Source of the DNA: Malacoraja senta
Taxonomy: Eukaryota
Length of the DNA stretch: 64,000 bases
Direction: 5' to 3'
NCBI GenBank assembly: GCA_038087875.1
Contig: CM075986.1
Coordinates: 6,882,001 to 6,946,000, forward strand
The notes under the pieces were generated by a model. It was not told the DNA's origin. It saw only the letters and a list, made by a program, of their open reading frames with translations, and did no database searches. Below, piece after piece: positions 35,491 through 63,928 of this stretch; the first letter of the stretch is position 1, and each line of letters begins with the position of its first letter. Made by a program: the position numbers and the translations under genes.

Positions 35491-35628
35491 TGTGTAAGAA
35501 GGAACTGCAGATGCTGGTTTAAACCGAAGATGGACACAAAAAGCCGGAGTAACTCAGCGGGACAGGCAGCATCTCTGGAGAGAAGGAATGGGTGACGTTT
35601 CGGGTCGAGACCCTTCTTCTGAAGAAGG
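35491..35628 (-). mobile_element. Penelope-like terminal fragment with mutated hammerhead core (CAGAAGA)
   Basis: Family consensus AGGAACTGCAGATGCTGG...GACGTTTCGGGTCGAGACCC; flanking 14-bp direct repeat TTCACAA(G/T)AAAGTT at 35477-35490 and 35629-35642. Confidence 0.75.
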
Positions 35629-36489
35629 TTCACAATAAAGTTGACGCAGTCTTGTTTATTTTGAAAGAACAAGTAAAGTCTACTACGTAAGCTGTCCCTG
35701 AGCCGACAGTGACTATTTTAGACCCGTGTAATCTACGCACAGAAGCCAACTCAAGAACCAAAAAACTCTCATAATTTTTTTTTTAAGTTTCAGTTTTGTA
35801 AACCCTCCCCTGCGCGGTCTCGTGGATCCAACTGCAGATATTTATGAACACAAAAGTTTAAATCCCGACATTGACAGAGAGGAGTATTTTATGGACATAT
35901 GACAAACTAACTTCAGATTTGGCGAAGTTGTCGTATCCAATCTAAAATTAAACCTGCTCTTAACCAATCTAAACTAAACCTTAAAACTCCGCGCCTTTTT
36001 CTTTAAATCTCAAGATGTAATGTAATTTTGCAGTGGGATCGATCACATGCTTTTTGCTGTTATTGACTTTGTGTTCACTCTGCTCACCCCGACAAATATA
36101 TCACCTGAAATGATTTTTTTCTATGGAGATCAGGGCGCCTGCAATTCATAACTGAGTGATATTTCAAACCCCAACAGCAGATTACAGTGTGTTATTGCCA
36201 CGTGAACCAAATATGCCGGGGTTCAATTTTTCTCCAGCCAAAACGGCAGCAATAAGTCTGCAAAAAAATGACTGAGATACCGATTCCATAAGAATACAGT
36301 GAAGGGTACTTCTGTATCCTACTTAGACCGAGACCCCGGAGTATTGTAATTTGGGCACCGTCTAGGTGAATGTAAAAAACCATGAAAAGGGATTGGGGGG
36401 GAGGGGGGGGGCGATGCGTGAGTTCAGGAAGTCGGGGTGGGGAACGTCACCTATACCAATGCATACCATGTATTTTTCCACTCGATTGT

Positions 36490-36622
36490 AATCATGTATT
36501 CAAGAGAGAGTTCGACAAAGCTCTTGGGGCTAACGGCATCAACGGATATGGAGAGAAAGCAGAACGGGGTACTGCTTCTGGATGATCAGCCATGATCATA
36601 TTGGATTGCGGTATTGGCTCGA
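36490..36622 (+). mobile_element. CR1-type LINE 3' end
   Basis: Encodes FKREFDKALGANGINGYGEKA, followed by the GATCAGCCATGATCATATTG 3'UTR motif. Confidence 0.7.
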
Positions 36623-38329
36623 AGCACGCAACGCAAGCTTCTCACTGTACCTCGCCGCACGTGGCAATAAGCTAAACTAAAACTAAGGGTAAGTAAGGGA
36701 GTGAGACTTCGCAGAGGGTTGAGTGAAGTACATCAACTCCAAACCCTCGAAACTAGTTCTCAGCAAAGCACTTAATAATTGAGATTATCTCCTCTCTCAG
36801 TACAGTATACAAAAATTCATTCGCTCACGCCCATCACCCTCCCAGCCCTCCCACATACCGGCGTTTATATGCCCACACAAGTCTACGAATTATGGAGTAG
36901 GTCGGAAGGGGCACTACCCACAACTACGAACTGGATACTCAATTACATTGTGTTATTTATCCATACAGGTACGAAACAAAGACGAGACCATTGCTTCGAT
37001 GGCCCTTAGTCATCCTAATCCGTATTGTATGCAAATCGGGGATAAATACACACGATAACACGTAACACACACGGTAACACGCGTTATTTGTGATAAGGGA
37101 GTTTGCTGGAGATGAGTTGTATCCTAAAGACAAACCGCTGCAAAACTGTGGATCTTCTCAGGAACGGTAACTGAAATGAATACTGGCGCTCAAATAAGAC
37201 CTGGGATATTTCCGTAAATTCTATCAAGTAATAAATATTTCAAGTAATTTTATACTGAGGCAGTATATTTCAAGTACTGCCTCGCCCTGCAATAGGGTTA
37301 ACTAAATTAATAAGGAATGGAATTATGTATAGGGAATGGAATAATGCTTCGAATGAAAGCAGAAATTCAGAACAATTGTTCGCCATCTGTAATTTTAAAG
37401 AGCTGTTCAGACGCGAACTTCAAGGTGATCATTGCACTCGGCCTTGGCAAACTGTGTAGCCGTCAGACGAATATCCTGCTGAAAGCTTGGATCTACAGAC
37501 CAATGCAATAAGCAGGACGCCTTTAAAAATAACTATACTTTGTGCAAAATGTCGGTCTGAGATTTTAGCTGATCAAAATAATAGAAAACACAAGCTGCAT
37601 CTTGTAGGACAGATTTCTGCTTCGTGTATCATGTGCGCGCGGATTGTTCCTTCATCTTATTCCAACCGTAGGAATTACCAAGACCGACCTCGGGCTTTCT
37701 ATGCACCTCAAGAAATGCACAGAATTCACAGGATTTACGACTACAATTACCAGGCCGGTCAAAAAAACGAGGCAGTAATGCGGACAGTTTGGTCTACGGT
37801 GCTGGTGGTCAGATGGTGAAAAACGAACCATACATCATTTCAAATTATTTAAATTAGATGCGAGCAATGGAGAAGACCGCACCAGTAAAAAGGAACCATA
37901 CTTAAACATTGTTCATCAAAGGTTCGCAATCATAACCCCGTATTTGAGCCAAGAAAGCGTCCTGGGTAGGGTGAGATTTTCACGGTTGTTAACACGGTTT
38001 AATAATGTTCCGTTCAGAATTACCCAAGTGGAAGAGGAGGGGGCGAGCAACGTTTTGTGTACAGAACATCTACCATAAAATGGCGCCAGGTCCCCTCTAG
38101 CTTTGAGAAATTCCTGCAGGAATTACTTCCTAGGGACGCGCAATAATTTTGAATTCCAATCCATATCGCGTCAATTCTAATTTAAAATAAAATTTACGAG
38201 AAAACTGTAATCGAATACAGATTTACAGGATCCACTATTCAGCCCACGCTGCTTACTATGGCTTTATGTCTGTGCTCACTAGCTCAAAGACTCGCCTCAA
38301 CCTGGTCGCGCTCTCATTTCGCCCCTTCC

Positions 38330-38647
38330 ATCAGGAACAGGGAACGGAACGAGAGTTTGAAAACCGTGACGACCAGGTTCAAGAACAGCTTCTTCCCAAC
38401 AACCATCAAGCCCCTGAACATTGCACAAGACCAACCTCAACAATGAACTTCTAAGGACTGGCTTTGGTTATATGAAGGACTTCGTTTATTACTCCAGTCT
38501 TGTGGATATTAACTTATTAGTTTTTATTGTTTGTTTATTATAGATTATCTGCCTGTATTACATTTACGGATACGTTAGGCTGCAGCAAGTGCGAATTGTA
38601 TTGTCTCTTTTTCTGTACATGTAACTCTTCACATGAGACTTGAGACT
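38330..38647 (+). mobile_element. Rex1/Babar-like LINE 3' end
   Basis: Encodes TTRFKNSFFPTTIKPLN (ORF2 C-terminal motif); short tandem tail TGAGACTTGAGACT. Confidence 0.65.
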
Positions 38648-39652
38648 GCACAATCATGCTTTCGTCGGCACCACCATAACTCTTCATTCTTCACTTTTAC
38701 GTTTGCGTATCTCTAGCGCGCCTATCATTCGTTAAAAAACACCCCAAAGAGAACTTCAAAACAAAAATCGGCGCAGGCCTAAAATAAACGGTTGAGAAAT
38801 ATACTGGATGATGTAGAATATAAATGGGCGACGGCATCTTGGGCTTTTCAAGCCTCAGCCCCGGCAAAGAATGTGACATTTATTCAACTCCGTGAATATC
38901 AATAGTAATTTTAAAATGCATTGCTAGACAACATGTCGAGGCGTTTTCGTATCTAGCGTTTTGGGATTTTCCTTCAGGTTTTCCACAAAGAAAATCGTCT
39001 GTTCTATGTCACGAAACTGACCGTCGTAAGAGGAAAATTTCAGCACTCTAATAACGCTTTGGAACGCCGGCGGAAAAAATACAAACTGAAAGCCAGAACC
39101 TGTTCTCGATTCATATACATATATGTGAACATACAGCTCAACACAGCGAGCATTAGATGAAAAGTAATTTGCAACGACTGCAATGTATTTACTCGTTAGA
39201 ATCAATGGCGGTATAAGATCATTGCACACCCGTTTTAAGATCGACATAAACTAACAAACTGGGGAAAGTTGGATTTGATTCCAGGGCCCTCGGTTAATTA
39301 CCCGTAATATTTCTGGCCGAACATCACGGAAAATTGACCGTTGGTCTTTTTCAACTCAACCCCAAATGGAAACCATCAAAAATATTCAAATATTTAGCAA
39401 GAGGTTCGAATTAAGTTCAGAAAGAAGGGATTTAAACTGTTTTCAGAATTTCGAAGGGACTCGCTGACCTTTCTTGGTTAATATCAGGTATAATTCCGGA
39501 ATCTTACAGAGAGCCTCCGATAGAAACAAGAGCGCGATCCCAACAAATAAACCATGATCCAATACACCGCACAATCCACTGACAGTCCATTTCAGAATTG
39601 AATAAACCACAGAAATCACATCGCGCAACTTTCAACTGCATATGAAACTCTA

Positions 39653-41047: not shown

Positions 41048-41062
41048 GAGAGAGAGGGGAGC

Positions 41063-41123
<61 letters not shown>
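41048..41123. repeat. (GA)n microsatellite
   Basis: Direct inspection. Confidence 0.9.
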
Positions 41124-41126
<3 letters not shown>

Positions 41127-41245
41127 TACAGATGCTAGTTTACATAAAAAGGCAAATTGCTGGAGCAACTCAGGGGGTCAGGCAGCATCTCTGGAGAAGA
41201 TGGATAAACCTGTCCACGTTGGCCCGCTCAATTACTCCAGCACTT
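41124..41245. mobile_element. Penelope-like terminal fragment (degenerate, inverted join)
   Basis: Similar to the 35491 family; GCTGGAGCAACTCAG...TTACTCCAGC inverted ends. Confidence 0.6.
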
Positions 41246-43173
41246 CTTCCCCTCATACTGGGAATTGCTGAAGGCTTTGTCTGCCTTCCGGATTTCTCTC
41301 TATCTGACTTTGACATTGACGCACCACACGTCATCACCAAATCCCAGTTCCATCGATTTTTCTATATGGAAAAATAAAAGTCATTTCCCTTCTAATTTTT
41401 CTATTCAATTTCCAGAGCCTGGAATTGAGATTCCTCGATAAATAACGATAAATCAACAGGACAAACATTTAAAATTATTATCTTATTTATTTTACCAGTG
41501 ATGCTAGAGGAGCATAAACGTTAGAATTTAGCACTCAATTTGAATTGAAATAAATTTAGAATAATTATATGTAAAGCATACCGATTTCCTGACATGCCGC
41601 GCTAACATTCAATCGGCAGAGTTACCGGGCGCCTGGTCAAACTAGAAGTTGAACGCAATGCGTCTAATACAATATTCTTAGCGACATCAGTATCTTGATC
41701 AAACCTATGAGTGAGATGCTATAAGAAAAATGCAATATACACCATAAATCCGATACAATCCTGTATTTTACGTTATGCCTTTTCGATTAAAAAATATATT
41801 CACTTCTGGGATTCCCCCACTAAAGTCGCGATTGCAAGCTGCTAACCAGCAACCCAAACTTGCATTGGAAGTATGCAGCTGCCGCCTAGTGAGTACACGA
41901 CGTTGGGATCAAGGAAAACTTAATAAACAGTCAAACGACACAGATAGATTTCCAACGAATCCTTGTGGTACGAATACACCTTGGAGAAAAAAACAGCACC
42001 ACAAACAGTATTCGACCCATCAATGAACTAAACGAGAACAATTAAACACAGTTGCGTGCTTGCGTAAATTATTCCTTAGAACATACTGTTTGCTCCAAAA
42101 TAAGTTAAACGTGGACTGATATTTCACATATGGGTTTGCATAAAAAATACAGCCACTGTGTATACCAAATACTTTCGGATGCGATTTTATATGATATCCC
42201 CTTCCCACGACCGTGGGAATAATACGAAGAGGGGATGTCTCCAAACCAATTGTCTTAATTGGCTTTAAAATGCAATCCTTGTTTTACTTCACTGTTCACA
42301 ATAAAATATTTAGCAATCTGTAGAACATTAATCATTGTTAATGCCTAACACAGTGTGGGAGTAATCTTGCAAAAGTGGAATAATATCACGATTTCTGACT
42401 GACCATGCGAAATATTTATTCATTTACAGAGTCAAACATTGACTACTATTAATTTGCTCAGAAAAAAAGAGCCTTGGCTCCAATAACCTCGATTTAGAAA
42501 TAATGTTCTCAGCAGGAGGTGGCTAACTGGAAAATACATGTCACCATTGCAATACCTAGTTTCACCACTTGAGGACAGTGTTGCTCCACAAATGCACCGA
42601 TAGGCACTTGAACCTTCTGTGATCGCCTTGTGTTCCACAGAAGGATCAAATTTGTTTTTCTTTCTGTTGCTGTGTTTGTAGAATTAAAACGTACAATAAT
42701 GCCACTACTTTCATTTTGATATCATGGTGTGATATATATTTAAGTTACACATCGGTTCAAATCATCATTGCTTCTTATATTTGAAGCTTGGTTTTCACAA
42801 ATAAAGTTTGCTTACTGAGTCAAAAACACTTGATCATTCAATTGTCCTGACGTGTTCGCTAAAAAAGAACACGATAGACGATAGGAAACTGTCACTCCGT
42901 TGGAGAGATTATTATTTTCCTATCTGTATCCCGATAAACATGTTATAATGTTACGTCTGCTTGTCTGTGGGCTCTTTGGCGGTTGCTAGGACGTCTTCAC
43001 AGAGAAAAAAAATGGCGTTGGTATTCATATACCTTTGAGGTCCAGGTTGGTAAATATAAGTTACTTTCAAATAATTTTTAAACCAGCATCTGCAGTTCCT
43101 TCATACACATTAATTTCAAAGACACTTGTGCATTAAAGCGGTCTACTTTTTGTTTACTGTGTTTCCAATTAGC

Positions 43174-44275: not shown

Positions 44276-44353
44276 AAGACAGACACAAAAAGCGCAACAA
44301 GCAGCATCTCTGGAGAGAAGGAATGGGTGATGTTTCGGGTCGAGACACTTATC
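44276..44353 (-). mobile_element. Penelope-like fragment with 13-bp TSD
   Basis: CAGATCTACTCTG at 44263-44275 and 44354-44366. Confidence 0.75.
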
Positions 44354-45515
44354 CAGATCTACTCTGTTCAGGTGCAATCTAGCCCTTCAGTGAATCGGAA
44401 GAGGTTATTTGCCCGCTTTCCACATTCAGTGCTGTGACTAACCTCGGGAGAAACTACAGAGCCATCAATCAGTGCCGATGGATGCGGTCCAGCAATACAG
44501 AATAGCATTTTGCTTATTAATAATAGTAATAACAATAATAAATTGTAATGAAGTAACCACAGGTTGAGGAAAGCATGGAGTATCTGATGTATCGGCGGGT
44601 CACCAATTCCATTGGCGTTGAGTGCAACGCTCCTTCTGTGTCCATTTAATACAAGTGTTCCATGATGTGCATAGATTCTCAACAATTCGGCCACTGACAG
44701 AAGTAATGGCCGGTCACAAGAAAGGTGTAGCCACTCACCTGTCAGACCGCCGCGGACCATTGCAGGCAACCCCTCTCCCGGTACGTATCCAACACCGTAG
44801 CCGCTCAGGTCCTCAGCCTCGAAGGGTTGCCGATTCTGCGCTCGCTCCTTCGTCCCTCTCGGTATGCGCGCAGCAGATTTTATAACTCTCTACATAATAT
44901 TACTGCTATTACGTTGATTGCGGCGTCCTGCGTATTATGCAGATTGGCCGCCGTTACTGTTTAGCTTTTTTGAGGAAAGAATCCTTCGTTTTATTTGTGA
45001 GGCTTTGTTGTGTATGTGCGAGGCCGGCGCGGAGTGTACTTTCCGCCTCGTTTACTCGGCTGCATTGATTGATGCCTCGGGAGGCTGATTTGAAAATGAG
45101 CGGTTAACTTGTTATTAAAGTTCAGTTCATATCATTGTAGCCACAGCAACGATGGTGGCCGTTATTGCCGCCAGATGGAAAGGTTGTCGGGTATTTATTA
45201 TTCGTGGAATCATCGCCCGTCTTTCGCCAAACGGAACAAAATAACCGGCGCCAAATTTGAACTCCGGCGAATCCCAGTTTCGAGGCTGCAGGAGCCGGGG
45301 ATCGACCGTGAAACTNNNNNNNNNNNNNNNNNNNNNNNNNNNNNNNNNNNNNNNNNNNNNNNNNNNNNNNNNNNNNNNNNNNNNNNNNNNNNNNNNNNNN
45401 NNNNNNNNNNNNNNNNNNNNNNNNNNNNNNNNNNNNNNNNNNNNNNNNNNNNNNNNNNNNNNNNNNNNNNNNNNNNNNNNNNNNNNNNNNNNNNNNNNNN
45501 NNNNNNNNNNNNNNN

Positions 45516-45563
<48 letters not shown>

Positions 45564-46089
45564 CGAGAGATGGAAGACAATTCACGATAGTGTCAAGTTG
45601 GCGATATGCAGAGTACTGCCCTGCCGACTACAAATTCAGAAGTTTCAGAAGATTCAATAGCTAAGAAGGAGATGAGGGAGATACAGAAGAAAAGTGGCCG
45701 TGGAAAGGAGGAGAGGGCAGCGAAGACGTTAAAATAGGTCAGGAAAATGGATAGCAAAAATTAATAGAGAGATATATGTTCTTGTTTCACTAGGGAGCAT
45801 TAGAATTTTCAAAAGATTCTTTCAGCATAGACATCCGGCAATGGTTGTAAAGCTGCGGCATCGAGGGAAGAAAGTGCAGGGAACGGATGAAGTCGGGAGA
45901 TTGAGGCTGCGAATATGAAGGCGTGGAGACGTCGGGGATTTGTTGTAAAGTATGAATAGGCGAGGAAGGGAGACTAGAGATGGAATATAAACATGAAAAA
46001 CGAAAAATTCTAATCAAGGGGACACAAAAATGGTGGAATTAATGACGGTTATTAGATTCCGGGTAAACACGTTTGCCTCTGTTAATAGG

Positions 46090-46185
46090 TAAAGACAAAA
46101 ATGCTGGAGAAACTCAGCGGGTGAGGCAGCATCTATGGAGCGAAGGAAATAGGCGACGTTTCGGATCGAGACCCTTCTTCAGACA
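46090..46185 (-). mobile_element. Penelope-like fragment with intact hammerhead core (46155-46182)
   Basis: Minus strand CTGAAGA-AGGGTCTCGATCC-GAAAC-GTC. Confidence 0.75.
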
Positions 46186-47054: not shown

Positions 47055-47160
47055 ACACAAAGTGCGGGAGGAACTCAGCGCGCCAGACGCCATCTGTGGG
47101 GGGAATGGACAGACGACAATTGGGTTCGTCTCGACCCGAATCGTCGCCTGTTCATTCCAG
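47055..47160. mobile_element. Penelope-like fragment, degenerate inverted join
   Basis: Family similarity; remnant GTCTCGACCCGAATCGTC. Confidence 0.55.
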
Positions 47161-48523: not shown

Positions 48524-48787
48524 TTGTTGTACCCGTTCTCACCTAGGCCACAGCTTACAATTACATGTTTCCTTTATCACCGTTACTTGCATTTATTTGT
48601 TTTATATATCGCTACATCACCGTCTATATCTCTCGTTTCCCTCTCCCCTGACTCTCAATCTGAAGAAGGGTCTCGACCCGAAACGTCACCTATCCTTTTC
48701 GCCAGAGATGCTGTCCGACCCGCTGAATTACTCCATATTTTGTGTCTATCTTCGGTTTAAACCAGCATCAGCGGTTCCTTCCTACAC
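48524..48787 (+). mobile_element. Penelope-like 3' terminal repeat with intact hammerhead core (48660-48687)
   Basis: CTGAAGA-AGGGTCTCGACCC-GAAAC-GTC; colinear with copy 62957-63310 in reverse; ATAATAAA flanking repeat. Confidence 0.8.
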
Positions 48788-49640
48788 ATAATAAAATCCA
48801 CGTTCGCATGCTGCATTTAGCAAGTACAGCGCCCAAAATGGTGAGGTTTGTGTGATTTAATTATTTGAGAATGTTCCAAGGCCGAGCATCGTATGTTCCT
48901 CACAGAATCTGGCAAACCAATAAAGATTATTTACTGAATTGCCAAGATTGTTTTACCTGCATTTTTAATAAGATTTTGCGTTTCGAAATATGGAAACTGA
49001 ATCCACCAACTATTCGGTTCCACAAGTAATTTATTACAATGTTAATTCATATTGCTAACTAAATTTCTGAAGCTAAAATTAATAATTAAAGTTCCATTTG
49101 TTTTAATTATTTATTTGAAACGATCCGTGAGCTCGAGTAATTCGCCTCCTTGGTTCCCAATAAGTTGTTGGGGGTTGTGATACCACATTCCTCCTCGTGA
49201 TCTATGTCTCTCGGTGTGCCCATTACGCACTGCCTTTATGACTGAAATCAAGCATAATAAAGATGTGAATGTGAAAAATGTGACTAAAATGCCCGCAATT
49301 CAGTGAATGTTTAACTTTAAAGCCACACAAGGAACCATATGAGTTATTCTCTGGCCTGCAGAGAGAATAACTCCTTTAACCCAGATGATCACAAGGTAGA
49401 ATGTTAACTGACCGGAGCAAACAATCCCCAGGAAGAATTTTTTATATGTATCCACTAAGAATACAAAAGAACTTCAAAAGTAGACTGTGCTATTACACAT
49501 TTATAACATATAGTACGAAATAAAATGCCTGCCCGTAGTTGCCACGAAGGCAGAATATGTTTCCAACACTAGGCCAAGGCAAAAGTAATCATATCTAAAT
49601 AGAACAATCAATATATGAAATTGAAAGCATGCTCATAAGA

Positions 49641-49731
49641 TAGTCTGATGAACGGTCTCGACCCGAAACGTCACCTATTATTTTTCTCCAGAGATGCTGC
49701 TTGACCCGTGACTCCAGCAGTTTTTATCCAT
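49641..49731 (+). mobile_element. Penelope-like fragment with CUGAUGA hammerhead core (49645-49672) and 9-bp TSD
   Basis: CTGATGA-ACGGTCTCGACCC-GAAAC-GTC; CTCATAAGA at 49632-49640 and 49732-49740. Confidence 0.75.
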
Positions 49732-50344: not shown

Positions 50345-50490
50345 CCCCAAGTGTTGGAAGAACGCAGCGGGTCAGGCGGCATCTGTGAAGGTAAATTGTC
50401 TGACTATCCATTTCCATCCACAGATTTGCCTGACCCGCTGAGTTCCTCCAGAACTTAGTGTTTTGCTCAAGATTCCAGCATTTGTATTGT
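50345..50490. mobile_element. Penelope-like inverted pair (degenerate)
   Basis: CAGCGGGTCAGGC...GCCTGACCCGCTG inverted arms. Confidence 0.6.
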
Positions 50491-51489
50491 CTTGAATCAG
50501 CGCTGGAATACGGGTTTCTATCTCAATTGCCAGGCAAGTTCATTTGACACAATCTCTTAAATAATTATTTTTTTACCTTTAATGCGTAATTTGTCATTTC
50601 CCCTCAGAACCGCAAGCAACAAACATACTATCAAATTTGACTTGTGTGGTTAAGTAGACTCGAAAGTCAGTGCACCCTACCACCCCCCCCCCCCCACCTT
50701 TATAGCAATTAATATATATAGTGTTTATTTGTCATATGTGGGCACGTAATTACAATCAGCTTGTATCGTTATTTTAAACGACGGCGGTATACATTTCCAA
50801 ATATCTTAGTCATTTCACGGCGTGTAGTCTGCCACACTCGAAGGAATAACTGGCTGCCTATCCTTCCTGCATGGTCTCTGCTTTACTGCACTGTAAAATT
50901 GTTATTCATCTATATACTCTAGGCGTATGATATTTTTGCCAGGTACTCCGGACCAAACTAGTAGGTTATTGCATATTCCAACAACTTCCATCCCCTTCCA
51001 CCTCCAAAAACAAACTCCTCCCATCCTCAGAACCACCATCCCGAGTTGTACGTCATCTGAGAGTGGCAACATTGCCTCTCCAAACTCGTGTCAACGTTGA
51101 TTATATATCTATCTACACGTTGAAAAACAAATTCCCCATCATGGATTCCTGCGGGAACCACTTCCTACTTCTTTGTCCGAAAACGTCCTTTGAACACCAA
51201 TATAATTGTTCCAGCATTCTGCTCTGCGAGCCTATTCCACATCTGACAATTGCTTCTTCTCATTAATTAACATTTAAAAACGTGGCCATTTTCTTCTCGT
51301 TTTTTTTGTGTCTCTATCGTATTTCCTTTCTTTTTAACTCGACTACTGAAATAACATTGACTTTAAATTAGGGTTAGAGAATAGATAAATGCGTTGAAAG
51401 ATGGTTACCTGTCTCGACTCTCAAGCAATTTCTATTTAATTTTGCATTACATAAGTTACTGGCGCTCAGAATAACCGTACATTGTTTTG

Positions 51490-51665: not shown

Positions 51666-54375
51666 ACAACGATCAGTACTAGACCGATTACCAATGGAAA
51701 ATAATCAATTACCGATGTTAAGGAAACACTTCCCCCATCCTTCAAGTTTAAACTCGGAAATGTACGAAATGGTGGGAACACGGGTTTATTCTATGTTTCC
51801 TATACTGGTAAAGATGTAATGCAAGAAAATTTGTTCTGAACATTTCGCTGCTATTGAAATTGATAAATGTTAAAAGTAATAAAATCGGATACTTTAAATG
51901 TAAAATGCTTAAAAATTGGAAGTGGGAAATGTCTTCAGATTTGTTATTATTATCAAATGGAAGGAATCCGATCATTCCTGCCCTTAGCTCAACGTTTAGC
52001 CGGAAAACTGTTTAGTTTAAGGCAAAGACTAGGATGTTGCAAGATACTCAGCTACAACAAATTGGACGGGAAACAAATCCAAGTCTGTGAGTATTTCCAG
52101 TATGGATTCTGTCCCCAAATTTAAGCAAACGACTTAATCTTAAAAACAATTATATTTTTACCATTAATGCCTGTTTTGCTTTTTCACTCGGAACCCCATC
52201 CAATAAACATACCATTAAATGAATCGTGATTCATTTTTCAAGGCATCGATAGTTTGAGAAATAGGATATTCAGTTCTACACCGAATCACTTTCCACCTTA
52301 CATTTTATATTCTTGTTATCCTCTGACAGAAATAGAACCGCTCAAATTGCAATGAGTATTACATTAATTGGAATATCTTAAATCTCGACGGCTCTGTACT
52401 TTCTGACATTTAAACATTGGAGAGCAGGAGTTAATAGGGGAAAAATCATGGTTCATTGTATCGAATTGACTAGTTTTCGGCAAATAAATAAGTGAAGCCT
52501 GTGTAATATACAGCGTCTGCTATGAACATTCTCTATCATTAAGGTACAGCAACCATTGTTGGTCTTTATTTTATAGACGGAGTGGTATTTAATGCGCGCC
52601 ACGGTCTGTTCAATCCCGTGAACTGAAAATTAAACGTTGAAATTTACTTTCAATACTGAAGAGAAAATAATGCACTTTCTTGTAAGGGGCCTTCAGGGTT
52701 ATTTAGTGCCTTCGGAATTATTTCTAAATTATAATCCGCCACTGTATTCATAGTTAAGTGTTTTCATTCTGGCGAGGAATGGCAACATTATACAACTGTA
52801 TCAGGATATCTCAATGACAGAGGATTACATGTTGGTCTCTGTTTAAAGATTTTTTAAACTCCAATCACTACAGATGTGTTCGTGTCTTCGGCGTTTGAAG
52901 ATATTTACATATAGCAGCCCTTCAAGATCTGGTCCCTACCAAGAGACGATCTTGGGGGGTTTTAAGTTAAATACCGTATCAGGAATTTAGCAGCGTAACT
53001 GCAACTGAAAATATGCTTAGGCTACTGGCTCCGGATATTTTAAGGGAGCAAGTGAAGTCTAGTCTCCAACGTAGTTTTTCCTCATCAAATAATATTAATC
53101 AGAAAACAACATTTTCAGAGGGAAATCCTACCACTGCTTTCACCCAAAACTGATAACAAATCCGACTCAATCTGTCAAATAAACTTCAGGTCCTTGATTA
53201 AAAGCTTTTTTGGCCTTTATTTATGTAAAGATCTCTTTATCTGGCCCACTCTCTCGCTCTCGACCGCCAAGTTTGATGTTGTTATAAGAGGCACCGCTGT
53301 CTGTCTTTTTTTTCTCTGCTGCCAGTTGTCTGCAAGCACATAAAGTTCACACAGACAGGCAATAAAGCCCCCGGCTGCTGTGTGCGTTCTTTATACAACG
53401 CCTTGGGATAAATCGCAAGCTTTAAAAGCTGCATCAGCGCAACCGTGAGATTGGTATTTTCACNNNNNNNNNNNNNNNNNNNNNNNNNNNNNNNNNNNNN
53501 NNNNNNNNNNNNNNNNNNNNNNNNNNNNNNNNNNNNNNNNNNNNNNNNNNNNNNNNNNNNNNNNNNNNNNNNNNNNNNNNNNNNNNNNNNNNNNNNNNNN
53601 NNNNNNNNNNNNNNNNNNNNNNNNNNNNNNNNNNNNNNNNNNNNNNNNNNNNNNNNNNNNNNNNNNNNNNNNNNNNNNNNNNNNNNNNNNNNNNNNNTTC
53701 TCCACTGACAGTTCCCTTTCGTTACTGGGCTAGATTTAAATAAAACTCTAAATGCAAAAAAAAAACATGTCTCCGTGAAAACAAACCGGTCAATTAATTG
53801 TACTTGATCATGGATGTTTGTCATGGACTGGCAACGGATAACATGTCTAACATGTCTCCTTGCGCAAGTATCCGAGTGTTTCAACTGTTTGGATTGATTG
53901 AAAAGAAATGCCTTGTAGGAATTTGGTTGCCTCCGCCGGCGCTTTAGCTCTTTATGACCGCGACGACTGGCCTCAAATGACTGAACTTCTGTTGTTATTT
54001 TTGTCGCTCACTTGTTTTCTCTCCCGCTGTCTCTAACCTTGAAACAGGACCAGAATTAAACTTTATTCCCTGGACGCACTCCCCCATGGAACGTACCGGT
54101 CGCACCTTCTGGAGCGGATGTTTATTCCTGTGAAAGTTTAAAGTGCTGGAAACTCGAGTAAGAAATCAATTCTATGGCCCGGATTTGTCCGAGGAGGTCA
54201 GTTCATAAATGTTTCTTTATTTGAGAACAAAGCGCCATTTCACTAACGCAGAGAAAGCTGCATCGCCAACACACACGGACTAAAAGCACACGTAAATGTA
54301 ACGTAAGAGGTGTCAGTACAAAGTGTGGCAGGAGCCTTAGTATTCAAGAAATATGAGCCAAAAACAACAACAAAA

Positions 54376-54575
54376 TGTGTAGGAAAGAACTGCAGATGCT
54401 GGGTTAAATCGAAGATAGACACAAAATGCTGGCGTAACTCAGCGGGACGGGCAGTATCTCTGGAGAGAAGGAATGGGTGACGTTTCTGAAGAACGGTCTC
54501 GACCCAAAACGTCACCCATTCCTTCTCTCCAGAGATGCTGCCTGTCCCGTTGAGTTACTCCAGCATTTTGCCTCC
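54376..54575. mobile_element. Penelope-like tail-to-tail inverted pair with TSD
   Basis: 64-bp arms 54422-54485 / 54507-54570; hammerhead core with GAAA>AAAA; flanking AACAACAACAA at 54363-54373 and 54576-54586. Confidence 0.8.
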
Positions 54576-56344
54576 AACAACAACAAGATGGTTCTAAAAA
54601 CGCTCCGAAGGTCACGCAGCATCTGCGGAGAGAAGGACCATTGGGTGGATTAGGACTTGTACTAAACTTTACATTTAATAGTTTGTTCATATATTTATAG
54701 AGAATGCATAAATCCCCTCTAGTTATAATATGGTTCGACGCGACACGACATCCGACCACGTGATCGCCGAAAGCTACTACATTATTTTTGGCGGGCAGAA
54801 TGGCATATAGGTTTAAGGTTTTGAAATATATGCTTCCATTATCTTTAATGTGTTTTCTATATTTTGACGTACTTTTGAAGTGAAATATTAATTTGAGGTA
54901 AATAGCACGACATCCTAATATTTTGTGTGAATTTACCAATAAGGAATCATCACTCCTTATTAACACTAACAAGCAAAAAGGTCGGTTTTTTGGTGTAATA
55001 GTCATTCGTGTTGGAATAATGATAATATTGACGAACTCTGCCTCATTGCCAATTCTCTATTTCGAAATATTTCGTTATTATATATTTTACGAAATTATTT
55101 CCCAACCGAATATTTTGCAAACAGAAATTAACATTTTATTTGAAACGTCCTTTCAAGGTGAATTGTGGCTTGTATCCTTCTCAAAGGCACAGTAGTTAAT
55201 TTGTACCAGTCTGACTGTTTTACAATAATTTTAACTACTATTTTATTGAGATTTTGTAACCGATCCAACAATAAGTGCACAGTGTTCCAGTGAGGGAACT
55301 CCGGTTACACCGTGAGATTGCCATGGTTCTGCTAATCAAGCGTGTGGAATGTGCCAAGATGCTCGTTATTTTTTAAAACATTGAGTTAATCCTGCTATAG
55401 GAAAAAAAGAATACACTTCAGTTCGTCATTTTCTTAATTTGGACGTTTGTCTCATTCTCCACGCTTTGGAAGAAAATGCCGCTGATTGCAGACCCCCCCC
55501 CGAATAAAAACTAAAATTGATTATATCACCACGAGTATTCATTTCACACTTTAAAATATCTATTTTTGAAGCGACGGCTCGTTTTTGCCGGCCACCTTTT
55601 TTTTCTGGAAGGCAAACTATTGGATTATGAGCTAAAAGAAAGTATACTGCAATTAACACATTTGTTCCTTTTGTAACTGGCGATGAAAGAACGAAAAAAT
55701 GCGCCACTTAAAGATGACGCAGAAAATGAGTTTGTTGAGCTGAAATGTAAAACAGAATTCCAAAGGATTCACCGTCGGAAGCGAAGAATAAAACTATTAA
55801 ACATCGATTTCAATGAGGACTCTGTGGAATTTGATCAGAATAACTTGCTCACAACACATCCAAAGTCCTTTGGTTACTTTGTCCTGTAATCGTGTCACTT
55901 TTGTTTTATTAAGTAAATGCTCATCAGAACTTGGTCAAGATTCAAACGCACCATAGTTATTTTAGCATCCGGCAAAAAACTCCTGCATTTCACCTTGGAG
56001 GTTTATCTCCACTGGGTCATCATGGAAATGGTTAGTAAATTCCCAAAACGATGTAGGCCCAAAGAGATCAGCGGGTACTTAACCCCGAATTTTGCTGACA
56101 TCCAGCACAGTACAGAGGTGCAGGGGTCTTTCGAAAATAAGTCTATATCTTAAATTGTTCTCCTCAGAGTACAGTTAACATTATTGACAATATTTCCCCA
56201 GTGAAAGGAGATTTGAGGAGAGGGGTGGTATTTAATCTATTTACTTTTTTTAAAACAAACTAATTTCTAAAATAATACTCTTACCTGCAATTAAATTTAA
56301 AAAATAAACAATGATAAAAATTAAGCAGCAGTAAAAAAAATAAC

Positions 56345-56460
56345 TGAAATACTGGTTTATACTAAAGATAGGCCCAAAGTGCTGGAGTAACTCAGAGGAT
56401 CAGTCCGCATCTCTGGAGAAAGAGGATAGGCGACCTTTCAAGTCGGGACCCTTCTTAGTT
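56345..56460 (-). mobile_element. Penelope-like fragment, degenerate
   Basis: Family similarity. Confidence 0.6.
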
Positions 56461-58598
56461 TGATATTACAACAGTAAACTTTAATTCAACTTATATAAAA
56501 TATCATGGGACGATTCTTTTTAAAATTCCATCTTAACACTTTCAGAATGATGTGGTTTAAGATATATGCCAATTTATTTTTAATATGTCCCCAACATCGG
56601 AGAAAATATCTGTTTTTGCAAAACTGTTCATAACTGGTAATACTACACTGCGGCATCGATGGAATGGTCTGGGGGGGGGGGGGAATACAACACTTGGGAA
56701 ATAAATGGATTGTGGTGACTGCGAATTAGGGTTTGTTGCACAAGAACCTGAAATATATTTATATTTTACAATACGCCATGAGGGAGGACGGTGTGTATTC
56801 CGAATTTCTTTTGTTAATTTCTATCATTTTTTGCTTTTAGTTTCTGTGCAAAAATTCGATTGCATCAATTATATCTTTCAAAACCACGGTTTACCAATAC
56901 ATAACATCGATTGCAATGTAAAGGGGACAACCGAATGGAGTTCTTTTGGAATTATGCGAATCGCCGCATTTTGTGTTAGCCTGAATGGAGGTGTTGTTAC
57001 GTTACGCATGTGATTTTAAAATAGTCTTCACAAAGACACTGTTCCTTTGCATATATTCGCGCCTATTTTCAGTAACATTATGGAGTCTTAACTCCATAGA
57101 CGTGGGTCTGAAACACGGAGCATTTCTGTAAATCAAAAAACATTTCCATACCTTCCTGTGAACAAATAAAAGAGAAAACATTCATTATACTTCCTCTAAA
57201 TGCCTGGTTTGTTCAACGTTTGATAATTATTTACACCCTATGTTAAAGAATAGTGTTATCTTTAAAGCGCCGTTTTACAGAGAATTGTTACAGATTTAAA
57301 AAGTTTGCAAAGCAAAATGAAACAATTTTCACCTTTAATAAGAATTTATTTCCACGGGCACAGTTTAGATTCGAGCTCATTTTCACTCATTTGATTCTTT
57401 GACAACAATTCTGCTGCTCCAACTGCGGACAGATCGACTTTGTTCATTGGAGCATGGAGATCAGATCAATCTAATTCTACAATGAATAAGAGCGAGACCG
57501 GCAACTCAAACGAAACAGCAGAAAGATAAATAGTGCACCAACCCTTGATATTTTAAAGTCAAGTACAAAAAAACAAAGTTGGCAACTTACAACGGCAAAA
57601 ATATCAAACATTGTGAATAAAGAAGACAAATTGCATTATTTTTAATTGTAAATAAAAGTTATAGGCATTCTGGTTTATTTGTTTAAATGAGAGGTCAAGG
57701 TGAATACCTAAGGTCCACGTTGCATCGCGCCGCATAGGCTGCAAGCAGTTAGAAATGGGGAAGTCAATTAAAAAGTAATGATCAGGTGACAGCAAAGTCG
57801 CTTATTAAAATTCTGAAATGCAGAAAGGTAAAACGGAGGGGAAATCGTGCAAAGAACCGCAGTACCGCTGTATGGACAAATCGGACTGAATAAATAGTAT
57901 TTGGTGCGAAATAGTCGCAGCTTTGAAGTCAGACAAAAAGTTCATTGCCGCAGTTGTCATAGCGGACAGAAAAAGGCCGGAAAGAGTGCGGTGGCTAAAT
58001 TGCTTACCGTCTGCGAGTTTACGCACCAGAGCCATATACTACAAAAGAGCCGATGTTGGTCATTTTGCTGGGTGAAGAGATGAACTTGTAATCGCATTAA
58101 GACGCGATAGACATCAGCACTCACGCACTGCAGGCGCATAATATTAACTCGCTCGGCCCTGGGGTTTCGAGTTCCCACCCTTCATTGGTCGCAGAAGTCT
58201 CACTTTACATCTTAAGAGGTCCCTACGTTATTTCCGTACTTGAACTACAGAGTAAGTACAGCCAAATTGCGAACTTCCACCCTACTTACGGAGTGAAATT
58301 GTACTGTGGCAATAGTTCATTATTACTTGATATTTACTCTACCCTGGCCCCCACTCTCATCCTCATGTAGACATGCGCAATGTATGCGTCCATGCATAGT
58401 TATACTATCTATATATGTGTAAGGGACCTTCAACTACAATTAATGAATACATTCTACAATAAACACAAAATTCTGTACCCCTGCCTACAGCCAGATATAT
58501 TCAGATACAGTGACCGTCACACACAGGAAAAGACAAGGCCGAGGAATACATCCACTATTATCGACATGCATATCGAAAGGTACTGACTGACAATCTGG

Positions 58599-60004: not shown

Positions 60005-60092
60005 AAAGAAAGGTCTCGACCCGAAGCGTCACCCATTCCTTCTCTCCAGAGATGCTGCCTGTCCCGCTGAGTTATGCCAGCATTTTGTGCCA
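60005..60092 (+). mobile_element. Penelope-like fragment with 8-bp TSD
   Basis: GGTCTCGACCCGAAGCGTC...; AAATGCTA at 59997-60004 and 60093-60100. Confidence 0.75.
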
Positions 60093-61124: not shown

Positions 61125-61255
61125 GAGTCTGAAGTCGTGCCTCGACCGGAAACGGTCTGCCCATTTCTTCCACAGACGCTGCCTGACCCGCTGAGTTCCC
61201 CCAGCACGCTTCATTTTGCTCTATGTTCCAACACCTACAGTTCCTTGTGTCTCCC
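61125..61255 (+). mobile_element. Penelope-like fragment, degenerate
   Basis: Family similarity. Confidence 0.6.
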
Positions 61256-61920: not shown

Positions 61921-62753
61921 AAAAGCAATGTGCATGTATATAAATGAAGAGGTACAGAGATCAAGAGATCAAGAGTGTTTTATTGCCATATGTCCCAGAC
62001 GGAACAATGAAATCCCCAAATTTCTGTTCAATTATCGATTTGGAGCACAGATACTGTCCGGATTTCTGCAGGTGTTTTTAAACAGTGGTTACTTAAGGTA
62101 TGTTCATCGACGTCTTGTTAATTTTCAGCTGCTAAGCCATTGTCCAAATGGGTGGGGGTCAGGGGTCATGTTGTTTACGCTCTGTCTTTCGAATAATCTG
62201 TTCAGTCCTCGCCCTTGTTCATCTTCCAGGTAGGCACGAAGAGCTCAAGCGTCGTTATTTTTACGGATATGAAGGTCCCGCAGTTAATAGCACTAAATGG
62301 GTTACGTGATCATAATTACTTTCTTCTTCTGCGTGATCTTACTATGGTCAGTACATTTCCATTGTCATAACAGTACAACATGATGTTCGTCTGTTTGCTG
62401 TCAAACGTTCCAATAGATTATTTCGACGAAGTGAAAAAACGTTTTGTTAATTCATGTCATTTTCAATTTCAAACCGCTCATATTAAAATATAAAACCGAA
62501 TAGTTTTTTTACTCTAACCATGGTGTTTTTCTTCTGTCCTAGATAAAGCAGGGTGTGGGCAATCAGTATTCTTTCCATAAGGTTTACACGTCGTGTGCTG
62601 CCGCAAGTAAGAATTTCTTTGTTTCGTTTTGGGACATATGATAATAAAACACTCTTGACTCTTGAAAATAGAACTGGAAATCCATTCACTTGATGTTCTA
62701 TTTTCCACAACTTGAAACTAAAAGAGGAAGAAACAGTTAAATGTATTGTCATG

Positions 62754-62847
62754 GTAGACAAAAATGCTGGAGAAACTCAGCTGGTGAGGCAGCATCTATG
62801 GAGCGAAGGAAATAGGCAACGTTTCGGGTCGAAACCCTTCTTCAGAC
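62754..62847 (-). mobile_element. Penelope-like fragment with intact hammerhead core (62818-62845) and 7-bp TSD
   Basis: Minus strand CTGAAGA-AGGGTTTCGACCC-GAAAC-GTT; TGTCATG at 62747-62753 and 62848-62854. Confidence 0.78.
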
Positions 62848-62956
62848 TGTCATGTTTGGCATGTTCGGACGGAAGAATAACTTCAGGCCTCGTACTATGT
62901 GGGAATATCCCGATCCTTCATCTTGCTCTCATCAAAGTCATAAAGTAATAGTTGAT

Positions 62957-63310
62957 GTGTAAGGAGGAACTGCAGATGCTGGTTGTAACCGAAGATAGAC
63001 ACAAAAAGCTGGAGTGACTCAGTGGGACAGGCAGCATCTCTGGAGAGAAGGAAAGGGTGACATTTCGGGTCGAGACCATTCTTCAGACTGGTTAGGGATA
63101 AGGGAAACGGGAGGATGATGTGGAGAGATAAAGAACAATGAATGAAAGATATGCAAAAAAGGAACGATTATAAAGGAAACAGTTTGTAAGTTGTTTGTAG
63201 GGTGAAAATGGAAAGCTAATGCGACTTGGGTGGGGGAGGGCGAGGTAGAGAGGGAATGCCGGGGCTACCTGAAGTGAGATACATCAATATTCATACCACT
63301 GAGCTGCAAG
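62957..63310 (-). mobile_element. Penelope-like 3' end including ORF C-terminus remnant
   Basis: Minus strand LQLSGMNIDVSHFR* resembles the LxPxGLN GIY-YIG tail; hammerhead-like core 63059-63086. Confidence 0.75.
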
Positions 63311-63365
63311 GTTTGTGTAGGAATGGGAAGGAGAATTAAAGTGTCCGGCAACCGAGAGATCGGGT

Positions 63366-63887
63366 GTTAAAGAAGGAACTGCAGATGCTGGAAAATCGAA
63401 GGTACACAGAAATGCTGGAGAAACTCAGCGGGTGCAGCAGCATCTATGGAGCGAAGGAAATAGGTAACGTTTCGGGCCGAAACCCTTCTTCAGACTGATA
63501 GGGGGTGGGGAGAAGAAAGGAAAAAAGGAAAAAGGCGGAGGAGGAGCCCGAGGGCTGGGGGAGGGGAGTCTACATCCTGGGGGCTTGAACATTGAATTCT
63601 CCCAATTCTGCTAGCCCTTGCTGTCAGGGCAGTCTACATCCTGGGGGCTTGAACATTGAATTCTCCCAATTCTGCTAGCCCTTGCTGTCCCCTCCCCTTC
63701 ATCAGCCATCTGGTTGTCTCCTCCCCTCCCCCAGCCCTCGGGCTCCTCCTCCGCCTTTTTCCTTTTTTCCTTTCTTCTCCCCACCCCCTATCAGTCTGAA
63801 GAAGGGTTTCGGCCCGAAACGTTACCTATTTCCTTCGTTCCATAGATGCTGCTGCACCCGCTGAGTTTCTCCAGCATTTTTGTGTAC
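63366..63887. mobile_element. Young Penelope-like insertion with inverted terminal repeats and 17-bp TSD
   Basis: TSD CAACCGAGAGATCGGGT at 63349-63365 and 63888-63904; ~165-bp inverted arms; LHPGGLNIEFSQFC* present twice; hammerhead cores 63466-63493 (-) and 63796-63823 (+). Confidence 0.85.
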
Positions 63888-63928
63888 CAACCGAGAGATC
63901 GGGTTGGTTTACAGTTAATGTCGCTTTA

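What the first reader, a model, noticed from the sequence alone, without database searches (positions are those of the whole stretch)
35491..63904. Hammerhead-ribozyme-bearing Penelope-like retroelement family colonising the gap upstream of HoxB10
Seen: ~16 copies of one repeat. Several contain CUGA(A/U)GA-A-stem II-GAAA-C-G-U-H, the conserved hammerhead core: 46155-46182(-), 48660-48687(+), 49645-49672(+), 62818-62845(-), 63466-63493(-), 63796-63823(+). Stem II variants mostly keep pairing (GGGU-CUCG-ACCC, GGGU-UUCG-GCCC, GGGU-UUCG-ACCC, GGGU-CUCG-AUCC). Stem III is the loop-less palindrome ACGU, which can form only in a dimer. Longer copies carry LHPGGLNIEF* / LQLSGMNIDV*, resembling the LxPxGLN tail of Penelope GIY-YIG ORFs. 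Established: Penelope-like elements carry minimal type I hammerheads that act as dimers. Inference: what looks like a batoid SINE is a ribozyme-bearing Penelope terminal repeat, and minus-strand copies lie in the sense of any readthrough Hox-cluster RNA. Caveat: stem I is only ~2 bp (GU/AC or GU/GC), so many copies may be inactive. The element class is known; its presence in a Hox cluster is the new aspect.
Basis: partly seen in the sequence, partly recalled or inferred. Interest (0 to 1): 0.8.

Follow-up and report, generated by a model that had tools for sequence, protein, structure and literature searches.

The report
Penelope-like retrotransposon tails with hammerhead motif
The repeat scattered upstream of HoxB10 is the end piece of a very abundant Penelope-like jumping gene that carries the minimal hammerhead-ribozyme motif typical of that class; it is a real but ordinary family of dead insertions, with no sign that it acts on the Hox genes.

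Summary
All six hammerhead-core sites sit at the stated coordinates (0.03 expected by chance). The window holds about 16 to 19 fragments of one repeat, all above 35.4 kb.

Longer copies in the same genome run from this repeat straight back into a single open frame that has the Penelope-like element (PLE) hallmarks:
- a reverse transcriptase (RT) with DKG and YIDD motifs
- a CX4CX2C linker
- a C-terminal GIY-YIG endonuclease ending LHPGGLNIEFSQFC*
- flanking direct repeats that each hold the motif
- inverted head-to-head copies
- two alternative 3' ends 37 nt apart, which is the PLE "tail"

Relatives about 50% identical in sea urchins, a coral and unnamed assemblies carry the same minimal hammerhead 81-377 nt after their stop codon, with compensatory changes in the helices.

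The family is huge: more than 155,000 core-intact copies in 1.94 Gb. Copies decay neutrally. Helix I is only 2 bp, close tandem pairs are rare, and cleavage is untested.

Both the element class and its ribozyme are published. Their presence in the repeat-tolerant stretch upstream of HoxB10 is at about genome-average density.

One detail may be new: about three quarters of copies start 1-3 nt before the hammerhead. Two earlier scan notes elsewhere in this genome say the same thing as this finding.

The parts
35491..35622 (-). Short unit (132 nt) with the long 'tail' terminus. Hammerhead core mutated (U4 to A). Target-site duplication (TSD) at 35477-35490 / 35629-35642 (13 of 14 identical).
41123..41206 (-). 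Decayed fragment of the region downstream of the hammerhead. No hammerhead retained.
43077..43110 (+). Fragment holding only the 3' 'tail' extension.
44291..44358 (-). Decayed copy with a broken CUGA box and ACGU changed to ACAU.
46093..46184 (-). Short unit with the short terminus. Intact core at 46155-46182, stem II GGGU/AUCC (one G-U pair). TSD-like flanks at 46075-46087 / 46186-46198 (10 of 13).
47055..47114 (-). Decayed fragment of a more divergent subfamily.
48556..48790 (+). Copy truncated at its 5' end within the element's 3' UTR. Intact hammerhead motif at 48660-48687 (GGGU-CUCG-ACCC, GUC). Long 'tail' terminus.
49642..49731 (+). Short unit. Core boxes intact at 49645-49672, but C10.1 opposite C11.1 is a mismatch. 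TSD CTCATAAGA at 49632-49640 / 49732-49740 (9 of 9).
50351..50494 (.). Head-to-head inverted pair of a divergent subfamily (arms 50351-50400 minus strand, 50408-50494 plus strand). No hammerhead retained.
54370..54576 (.). Head-to-head inverted pair. Minus arm 54370-54486 is cut at GAAACGUCACC. Plus arm 54485-54576 starts at UCUGAAG and has G12 to A and G10.1 to C.
   Evidence: (I11)
56342..56465 (-). Old, strongly decayed copy.
60006..60089 (+). Copy truncated at its 5' end inside the CUGA box. GAAA changed to GAAG.
61126..61246 (+). Copy of a divergent subfamily with a degenerate core.
62753..62849 (-). Short unit with the short terminus. Intact motif at 62818-62845 (GGGU-UUCG-ACCC, GUU). 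TSD ATGACA at 62747-62752 / 62848-62853.
62955..63348 (-). Older long copy: endonuclease C-terminus (...LQLSGMNIDVSHFR*), 3' UTR, mutated hammerhead (63056-63078: G10.1 to U, C15.2 to U) and long tail. Its upstream end is interrupted by the young insertion.
63349..63365 (.). Left copy of the 17-nt TSD CAACCGAGAGATCGGGT of the young insertion.
63364..63585 (-). Left (inverted) arm of the young insertion: 3' UTR, intact hammerhead motif at 63466-63493 and long 'tail' terminus. 99% identical to L029.
   Evidence: (I1)
63562..63689 (+). Two tandem 64-nt copies of the ORF end (LHPGGLNIEFSQFC*) at the junction of the two arms.
   Evidence: (D8)
63626..63888 (+). Right arm of the young insertion: ORF end, 3' UTR, intact hammerhead motif at 63796-63823 and short terminus (...GUGUACC). 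99.6% identical to L029.
63888..63904 (.). Right copy of the 17-nt TSD.

Best explanation
The repeat is the 3'-terminal (pseudo-LTR) module of a very abundant, recently active Penelope-like retrotransposon (PLE) with a C-terminal endonuclease. About 120 nt after the ORF stop it carries a minimal type-I hammerhead motif: CUGANGA, a bulged A, a 4-bp stem II opening with G10.1-C11.1, GAAA, the loop-less palindrome ACGU, then H.

Shown here:
- The copies upstream of HoxB10 are separate insertion events with target-site duplications.
- They end at one of two termini 37 nt apart.
- Several are head-to-head inverted pairs.
- About three quarters of copies genome-wide begin 1-3 nt upstream of C3 of the motif; the rest run back into the 3' UTR and ORF.
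- Once inserted, copies decay neutrally. CpG decay hits core and helix III alike, and only 6 of about 19 fragments in the window keep both core boxes.

Inferred mechanism. Element RNA starts in the pseudo-LTR just before the hammerhead. The element's RT starts copying at two internal sites near the 3' end, as shown in vitro for the Anolis element (PMC11167929). The endonuclease nicks both target strands and both are extended, which gives inverted pairs. cDNAs that start in the first pseudo-LTR of a transcript reach the RNA's 5' end after only 95 or 132 nt. That would produce the SINE-like excess of short units without a separate master gene.

The hammerhead is a conserved part of PLE RNA. It probably acts, if at all, as a weak ribozyme that needs a dimer or protein help to process element transcripts. 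In this lineage helix I is reduced to 2 bp.

Nothing indicates a role in Hox regulation.
For: Link to a PLE ORF: (968- and 1093-aa frames; RVT_1 E 6.5e-6; GIY-YIG E 1.2e-3; DKG at 374; YIDD at 615; CX4CX2C at 835; LIY-CxxC-YIG at 872-887).

Pseudo-LTR arrangement: motifs at 564, 953 and 5022 of L029 flank the frame.

Homologues: about 50% identical across Metazoa, 69% in a bamboo shark. The homologues carry RVT_1, HTH_animal, DUF8422 and GIY-YIG.

Same motif in relatives: found on the ORF strand 81-377 nt after the stop in 9 of 10 foreign loci.

Covariation: 89% of cells paired, 10 of 12 pairs changed on both sides, 0 of 500 shuffles as high, and at most 41% paired when the partners are slid.

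Two 3' termini: compared with PMC11167929 and PMC8557442.

Inverted pairs. TSDs. 5' ends.

Abundance: 13,276 exact 31-mers and 155,043 core matches against 128 for the control.

Element boundaries and AT-rich flanks in other runs.
Against: - Rfam's hammerhead models give no hit, even at E up to 10. This is expected for a motif without a helix III hairpin, but it is still a failed test.
- Helix I is 2 bp, against 3-5 bp in relatives.
- The predicted minimum-energy folds pair GAAGAAGGGU with the downstream CCUUC tract instead of forming the hammerhead.
- No copy begins at the predicted cleavage site.
- The Pfam scores for RVT_1 and GIY-YIG are below the curated cut-offs.
- Helices II and III and the C3-G8 pair were part of my search descriptor, so only the helix I covariation and the motif's fixed position are free of selection.
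- The start of transcription before the hammerhead is inferred from DNA copies only.
Confidence: 0.85

Rival explanations
1. The short 95/132-nt units are an independent non-autonomous element (a SINE or a solo retrozyme-like unit) with its own master copies. It would borrow the PLE 3' end for mobilisation, rather than being a by-product of PLE transcripts.
For: The 5' end is discrete, 1-3 nt before C3, in about 20 of 27 sampled copies and in many unselected ones. There are more than 155,000 core-intact copies. A 2026 preprint argues that animal retrozymes derive from PLE pseudo-LTRs and lists one chondrichthyan.
Against: There is no tRNA, 5S or 7SL head. The unit is collinear with the PLE pseudo-LTR from its first to its last base. 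The one young-type insertion in the window carries the same diagnostic changes (GGGUUUCGGCCC, GUU) as the ORF-bearing young elements. The units are dispersed or inverted, not tandem.
Confidence: 0.25
2. In this lineage the hammerhead-like block no longer works as a ribozyme. It is kept for another reason, for example as part of the pseudo-LTR promoter or start site, or as a protein-binding hairpin.
For: Helix I is only 2 bp. The hammerhead is not the favoured predicted fold. No genomic copy starts at the cleavage site. Close tandem pairs are rare (34). Published minimal hammerheads cleave poorly in vitro, and cleavage is dispensable for insertion in vitro. Other blocks of the unit are equally conserved.
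Against: All 11 core nucleotides, the bulged A, G10.1-C11.1 and the ACGU palindrome are kept in every subfamily master seen. They match relatives from other phyla, where helix I covaries. The D. virilis Penelope motif also has a 2-bp helix I.
Confidence: 0.35
3. Minus-strand copies act on Hox-cluster read-through RNA by cleaving or otherwise processing it, so the family has been co-opted at this locus.
For: Three core-intact copies (46155-46182, 62818-62845, 63466-63493) lie on the Hox-sense strand. Two of them are 648 nt apart.
Against: The density of intact motifs here is 6 in 29 kb, from about 5 insertion events, against 2.3 expected from the genome average. Other copies in the same stretch are freely decayed. 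The copy at 63466 is half of a 185-nt 95% complementary inverted repeat that would sequester it. No expression data could be obtained; all runs were contigs.
Confidence: 0.03
4. The match to the hammerhead core is a chance resemblance in a common repeat.
For: Rfam gives no hit. Any motif fixed in a master copy will appear thousands of times.
Against: The motif sits at the position where PLEs are known to carry hammerheads. It recurs in distant PLE relatives with different helix sequences. It is also found by a model trained only on those relatives.
Confidence: 0.03

Closest known systems
Canonical C-terminal-endonuclease Penelope-like elements (Neptune, Nematis, Penelope/Poseidon clades; Arkhipova 2006; Craig et al. 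2021, PMC8557442)
   Same: A single ORF with an RT (DKG, YxDD) followed by a GIY-YIG endonuclease. Pseudo-LTRs from partial tandems. Adjacent inverted 5'-truncated copies. An optional 30-40 bp tail. TSDs. A hammerhead in the pseudo-LTR.
   Different: The CX4CX2C linker points to Neptune/Nematis rather than Penelope/Poseidon, but no phylogeny was made. The family is unusually abundant, and most copies are 95/132-nt units with a fixed 5' end.
Minimal hammerheads of metazoan PLEs (Cervera and De la Pena 2014, PMC4209133)
   Same: The CUGANGA and GAAA boxes, an unpaired nucleotide between A9 and 10.1, the G10.1-C11.1 pair, a palindromic 15.2-16.2 without loop III, heavy genome-wide spread, mostly as single motifs.
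   Different: Helix II is 4 bp (the paper's families often have 6-8). Helix I is 2 bp (the paper gives 4-5, with 2 in D. virilis). Cartilaginous fishes are not named in the parts of the main text that I read.
Poseidon of Anolis carolinensis (PAc), studied in vitro (PMC11167929)
   Same: Two RT start sites that explain the optional tail. Both target strands cut and extended. AT-rich target. A hammerhead present but not needed for insertion.
   Different: In PAc the hammerhead overlaps the ORF start. Here it lies about 1 kb upstream of the long frame and 120 nt after the previous stop. Nothing was tested biochemically here.
Non-LTR retrozymes of animals (Cervera and De la Pena 2020, PMC7229834; Li et al. 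2026 preprint)
   Same: Short non-coding units with a type-I hammerhead, related to PLE pseudo-LTRs.
   Different: Retrozymes are tandem arrays that give circular RNAs. These units are dispersed or inverted, and only 34 close tandem pairs exist genome-wide.

Membership tests
Penelope-like element (EN+) | RT domain with the PLE DKG motif and a YxDD catalytic motif | tested here: met
   RVT_1 E 6.5e-6, which at 26.4 bits is below the 29.6 cut-off. KPADKGG at residue 374 and YIDD at 615 of the L029 frame.
Penelope-like element (EN+) | GIY-YIG endonuclease in the same ORF, C-terminal to the RT | tested here: met
   GIY-YIG at 19.5-22.5 bits, just under the 22.6 cut-off. LIY...YIG...R...H...E...N are visible in an uninterrupted 968-aa frame.
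Penelope-like element (EN+) | CX2-5CxxC linker and CCHH motif of PLE endonucleases | tested here: met
   CNRKRCNTC at residue 835. CxxC lies between GIY and YIG, with EH and QH downstream. Read by eye only, without a profile.
Penelope-like element (EN+) | Pseudo-LTRs from partial tandem copies | tested here: met
   In L029 the tail module occurs at 534-657, 784-1082 and 4853-5114 around the frame at 1998-4901.
Penelope-like element (EN+) | Adjacent inverted 5'-truncated copies | tested here: met
   Window 63364-63888, 54370-54576 and 50351-50494. At least 10 of 27 sampled loci show the same.
Penelope-like element (EN+) | Optional 30-40 bp tail extension at the 3' end | tested here: met
   The two termini are 37 nt apart. 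The 3' ends of 94 copies are bimodal, at about 92-101 and about 126-136.
Penelope-like element (EN+) | RT groups with PLE/telomerase RTs in a phylogeny | not tested
   No reference PLE set was available. There was no match to solved structures.
Minimal PLE hammerhead | Both catalytic boxes, CUGANGA and GAAA | tested here: met
   Six sites in the window and 155,043 in the genome.
Minimal PLE hammerhead | Unpaired nucleotide between A9 and 10.1, and a G10.1-C11.1 pair | tested here: met
   A bulged A followed by GGGU/ACCC or GGGU/GCCC, the same as in foreign relatives.
Minimal PLE hammerhead | Palindromic 15.2-16.2 without loop III | tested here: met
   A-CG-U here. ACGU or AAUU in relatives.
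Minimal PLE hammerhead | Helix I of about 4-5 bp | tested here: not met
   2 bp (GU/AC) here, 1 bp in the 48660 copy and 3-5 bp in relatives. D. virilis has 2 bp according to PMC4209133.
Minimal PLE hammerhead | Location in the pseudo-LTR on the ORF strand | tested here: met
   120-121 nt after the stop and again upstream of the frame.
Minimal PLE hammerhead | Self-cleavage at H17 | not testable with these tools
   Only contigs were available, no raw RNA reads.
Rfam hammerhead families (types I, II, III, HH9, HH10) | Match to the curated covariance models | tested here: not met
   No hammerhead hit at the gathering score or at E up to 10. These models include a helix III hairpin that this motif lacks.
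Classical SINE | Head derived from tRNA, 5S or 7SL with an internal pol III promoter | tested here: not met
   ARAGORN found none. Rfam gave no such hit in 35-64 kb.
Non-LTR retrozyme | Tandem head-to-tail units, each with a hammerhead | tested here: not met
   There are no tandem units in the window, and only 34 close tandem pairs in 1.94 Gb.

The most novel reading that the evidence does not exclude
The dominant form of this family is not a randomly truncated copy. It is a discrete 95/132-nt unit whose 5' end lies 1-3 nt before C3 of the hammerhead. If that end is the pseudo-LTR transcription start, the hammerhead sits at the very 5' end of every element RNA, which would explain why helix I can be only 2-3 bp. 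The more than 100,000 SINE-like units would then arise when the RT starts at the first of two pseudo-LTR start sites on a full-length transcript. A PLE would thus make its own 'SINE' without a separate master gene.
Probability: 0.4. Interest if true: 0.35.

Novelty: new member of a known kind. Interest (0 to 1): 0.2.

Why it matters
For annotation, this repeat should be labelled as a Penelope-like element tail, not as a SINE. With more than 155,000 core-intact copies, it is probably several per cent of this genome.

For transposon biology, a young and apparently intact PLE family with a very large set of short copies that share a fixed 5' end is good material for three questions: where PLE transcripts start, how the two reverse-transcription start sites are chosen, and whether a hammerhead with a 2-bp helix I still cleaves.

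For Hox biology it matters little. The insertions lie in the repeat-tolerant stretch 5' of HoxB10, at about genome-average density, and the compact Hox7-10 part has none.

Tried and rejected
- Rfam scans at the gathering score and at E up to 10 gave no hammerhead hit. I kept this as a failed test rather than as evidence of absence.

- I first took the RT next to the endonuclease piece in L015 as the element's own RT. Its best homologues are about 70% identical teleost LINE-type proteins (PF09004, 'transposon BS'), and the endonuclease piece diverges from L013 just upstream of the CX4CX2C motif. I therefore rejected it as an unrelated neighbouring element.

- Search of solved structures: nothing found.

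I used the flanks of 58 loci instead.

- One own-genome DNA search failed because the machine was busy. One pattern was too long.

- Looking for RNA evidence: all runs are contigs of uncertain type. They cannot show starts, ends or expression. They only confirmed the repeat boundaries and the AT-rich flanks.

- MAFFT on 70-nt segments misaligned the 3-nt loops (A1). I replaced it with 38-nt segments (A2).

- Thermodynamic folding of monomers and of a dimer does not recover the hammerhead fold.

- Close tandem dimers: only 34 genome-wide.

- tRNA head: none.

Full report
**Observation**

Dinucleotide-preserving shuffles give 0.03 on average, and none of 100 reached six. A 23-mer of the core with up to three mismatches finds 11 sites, all above 35.5 kb.

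The repeat finder and BLAST define 16 merged copies between 35491 and 63888, and none in the first 35 kb. A more sensitive pass adds decayed fragments at 47055-47114 and 50351-50494.

The four assembly gaps lie at least 240 nt from any copy, so nothing here depends on continuity across them.

The homeoboxes of Hox7, 8, 9 and 10 type, and mir-196, are all on the minus strand. A cluster with both Hox7 and Hox8 is HoxB by established knowledge.

**What the repeat belongs to**

The young copy at 63626-63888 has near-identical relatives across the genome. In several of them the frame ending LHPGGLNIEFSQFC* continues upstream through a GIY-YIG domain.

A protein search of the genome with that piece gave 103,380 first-look candidates. 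Many have long open frames, up to 1093 aa.

Two such loci were read. L029 has an uninterrupted 968-aa frame and L030 a 1093-aa frame. Both match RVT_1 (E 6.5e-6 and 1.4e-5) and GIY-YIG (E 1.2e-3), in that order. The scores are below Pfam's cut-offs, but the motifs that define Penelope-like elements (PLEs) are present:
- KPADKGG
- YIDD
- a CX4CX2C linker
- LIY-CxxC-YIG, followed by the R, H, E and N residues (features as listed in PMC8557442)

In L029 the hammerhead motif lies at 564 and 953 upstream of the frame and at 5022, which is 121 nt after its stop. This is the pseudo-LTR arrangement.

Homologues of the frame are about 50% identical in sea urchins, a coral, a snail and unnamed assemblies, and 69% identical in a bamboo shark. 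They share a set of Pfam families with each other: RVT_1, HTH_animal, DUF8422 and GIY-YIG. My local Pfam scan of the own frame returned only RVT_1 and GIY-YIG.

One trap: the RT next to the endonuclease piece in L015 is an unrelated LINE-type RT. I discarded it.

**Structural signatures of PLE insertion in the window**

- The insertion at 63366-63887 is a tail-out, head-to-head inverted pair. Its arms are 185 nt long and 95% complementary. It is 99.0-99.6% identical to L029. It is flanked by a perfect 17-nt target-site duplication at 63349-63365 and 63888-63904. It landed inside the ORF end of an older copy (62955-63348...LQLSGMNIDVSHFR*).
- Further inverted pairs lie at 54370-54576 and 50351-50494.
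- Four short copies also have target-site duplications.
- Copies end either at ...GUGU(A/C)(C/U)A/CC or 37 nt further on, at ...CUGCAGUUCCUUCUUUAAC. In 94 unselected copies the 3' ends are bimodal, at reference positions of about 92-101 and 126-136. This is the optional 30-40 bp 'tail' described as unique to PLEs. In the Anolis element it is explained by two internal reverse-transcription start sites, and that protein also cuts and extends both target strands (PMC11167929; PMC8557442).
- Contigs of four other runs pile up by five to six orders of magnitude between 63353 and 63903. They break at 63364/5 and 63888 into heterogeneous AT-rich flanks. This agrees with those boundaries and with an AT-rich target.

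**Is the hammerhead real?**

Rfam's hammerhead models give nothing, even at E up to 10. Those models include a helix III hairpin that this motif lacks.

Against the features that Cervera and De la Pena (PMC4209133) give for metazoan PLE minimal hammerheads, the motif has:
- both catalytic boxes
- the unpaired nucleotide after A9
- the G10.1-C11.1 pair
- the palindromic 15.2-16.2 without a loop

It differs in having a 4-bp helix II and only a 2-bp helix I. Their D. virilis example also has 2 bp.

For an independent test I scanned ten PLE loci from other organisms with a simple descriptor. Nine have one motif of the same build, on the ORF strand, 81-377 nt after the stop. The only additional hits are copies in inverted or upstream repeats. 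Five distinct foreign lineages differ in every helix:
- stem II GGGC/GCUC, GGGC/GCCC (in two lineages), GGUC/GACC or GCCC/GGGC
- helix III ACGU or AAUU
- one U3-A8 in place of C3-G8
- helix I of 3-5 bp with unrelated sequences

On the alignment of seven lineages (the five foreign ones plus the two from this genome), 89% of cells pair, against 65% in shuffles and at most 41% when the partners are slid. Ten of twelve pairs carry changes on both sides. Helices II and III and the C3-G8 pair were required by my descriptor, so only helix I and the fixed position are free of that selection.

A covariance model built from the five foreign motifs alone was run without filters over the whole window.

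**Within this genome**

The core pattern occurs 155,043 times, against 128 for the reversed control. The exact 31-mer occurs 13,276 times.

The listed variants are mostly CpG decay. It hits the loop, C11.1/G12 and the ACGU palindrome alike, so inserted copies evolve neutrally.

In 94 unselected copies the non-CpG core columns keep the modal base in 0.955 of copies, against 0.855 downstream. However, two other blocks (around CCAGAGAUGCUG and CCAGCAUCUGCAGUUCC) are as conserved, and local-alignment clipping flatters the 5' box. On its own this test is weak.

Predicted minimum-energy folds pair GAAGAAGGGU with the downstream CCUUC tract rather than forming the hammerhead. Only 34 pairs of motifs lie in close tandem. 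A dimer would therefore have to form between distant copies or between molecules.

No copy begins at the predicted cleavage site. This matches the published finding that uncleaved RNA is the template.

**A detail that may be new**

Of 27 copies sampled with a query that starts at the motif:
- 7 run on into the element's 3' UTR
- about 10 abut an inverted partner
- about 10 abut unrelated DNA

So about three quarters have their 5' end 1-3 nt before C3, at (C)AG|UCUGAAG. Unselected copies and the window's own copies behave the same way, and target-site duplications bracket these ends.

I infer that element RNA starts there. Pseudo-LTR start sites are known for Penelope and Chlamys. I also infer that the 95/132-nt units are cDNAs made from the first pseudo-LTR of a transcript. 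This rests on DNA copies only.

**Rivals**

- An independent SINE lacks any pol III head, and the unit is collinear with the pseudo-LTR.
- A retrozyme would be tandem.
- A Hox-related role has no support. There are six intact motifs, from about five insertion events, in 29 kb against 2.3 expected. There are none in the 35-kb Hox7-10 part against 2.8 expected. Neighbouring copies are freely decayed.

**Novelty**

PLEs with minimal hammerheads are published for many animals. A 2026 preprint reports PLE-derived hammerhead elements in one chondrichthyan. Two earlier notes of this scan describe the same association elsewhere in this genome.

This is a new, very abundant and apparently young member of a known kind, sitting in an unremarkable place.

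Noticed in passing
window 24429-24502 (-): mir-196 precursor (Rfam 67.9 bits, E 9e-14), between the Hox9- and Hox10-type homeoboxes.
   Followed up: no
window about 2954, 6951, 17786, 28082 (-): Homeobox exons of Hox7, Hox8, Hox9 and Hox10 type, all on the minus strand. The stretch 1-35 kb holds no copy of the repeat.
   Followed up: partly
L015:4193-5095 (+) (G000 C1050): A LINE-type RT next to a truncated PLE copy is 64-74% identical in protein to catfish, carp and cichlid sequences (PF00078 plus PF09004). That is high for a cartilaginous fish against teleosts. It could mean horizontal transfer or a very conserved LINE clade.
   Followed up: no
L029:1080-2973 and L030 (same region): The long PLE frame has its first Met only at residue 516 (641 in L030). 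Upstream of it, three overlapping open frames run through a Pro/Thr/Arg-rich repetitive stretch. A 5' intron, a frameshift or a non-AUG start is possible.
   Followed up: no
window 63840-63888 and 63366-63410; L029:1000-1082: The word CCAGCAU stands 13-22 nt before each of the two alternative 3' termini. Its complement, GAUGCUG, lies just upstream. This may be the hairpin that positions the two reverse-transcription starts.
   Followed up: no
window 63795-63840 and other copies: In predicted folds GAAGAAGGGU, which covers part of the core and stem II, pairs with the CCUUC-rich tract after the cleavage site. This alternative helix would block the hammerhead fold. It is not seen in foreign relatives.
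   Followed up: partly
G000 C1:239438-239505 and 33 other places (L071-L076): Rare direct tandems of two hammerhead motifs 37 nt apart, start to start. This is the arrangement a cis dimer would need.
   Followed up: no
window 63364/5 and 63888: Across thousands of other insertions in several runs, the flanks at both element ends are heterogeneous but strongly AT-rich. This suggests an AT-rich target preference.
   Followed up: no
window 63501-63788: Sub-threshold Rfam 'MIR1437', 'MIR408' and 'Hsp83 3'UTR' hits. They are artefacts of the 185-nt inverted repeat and its purine/pyrimidine tracts.
   Followed up: yes
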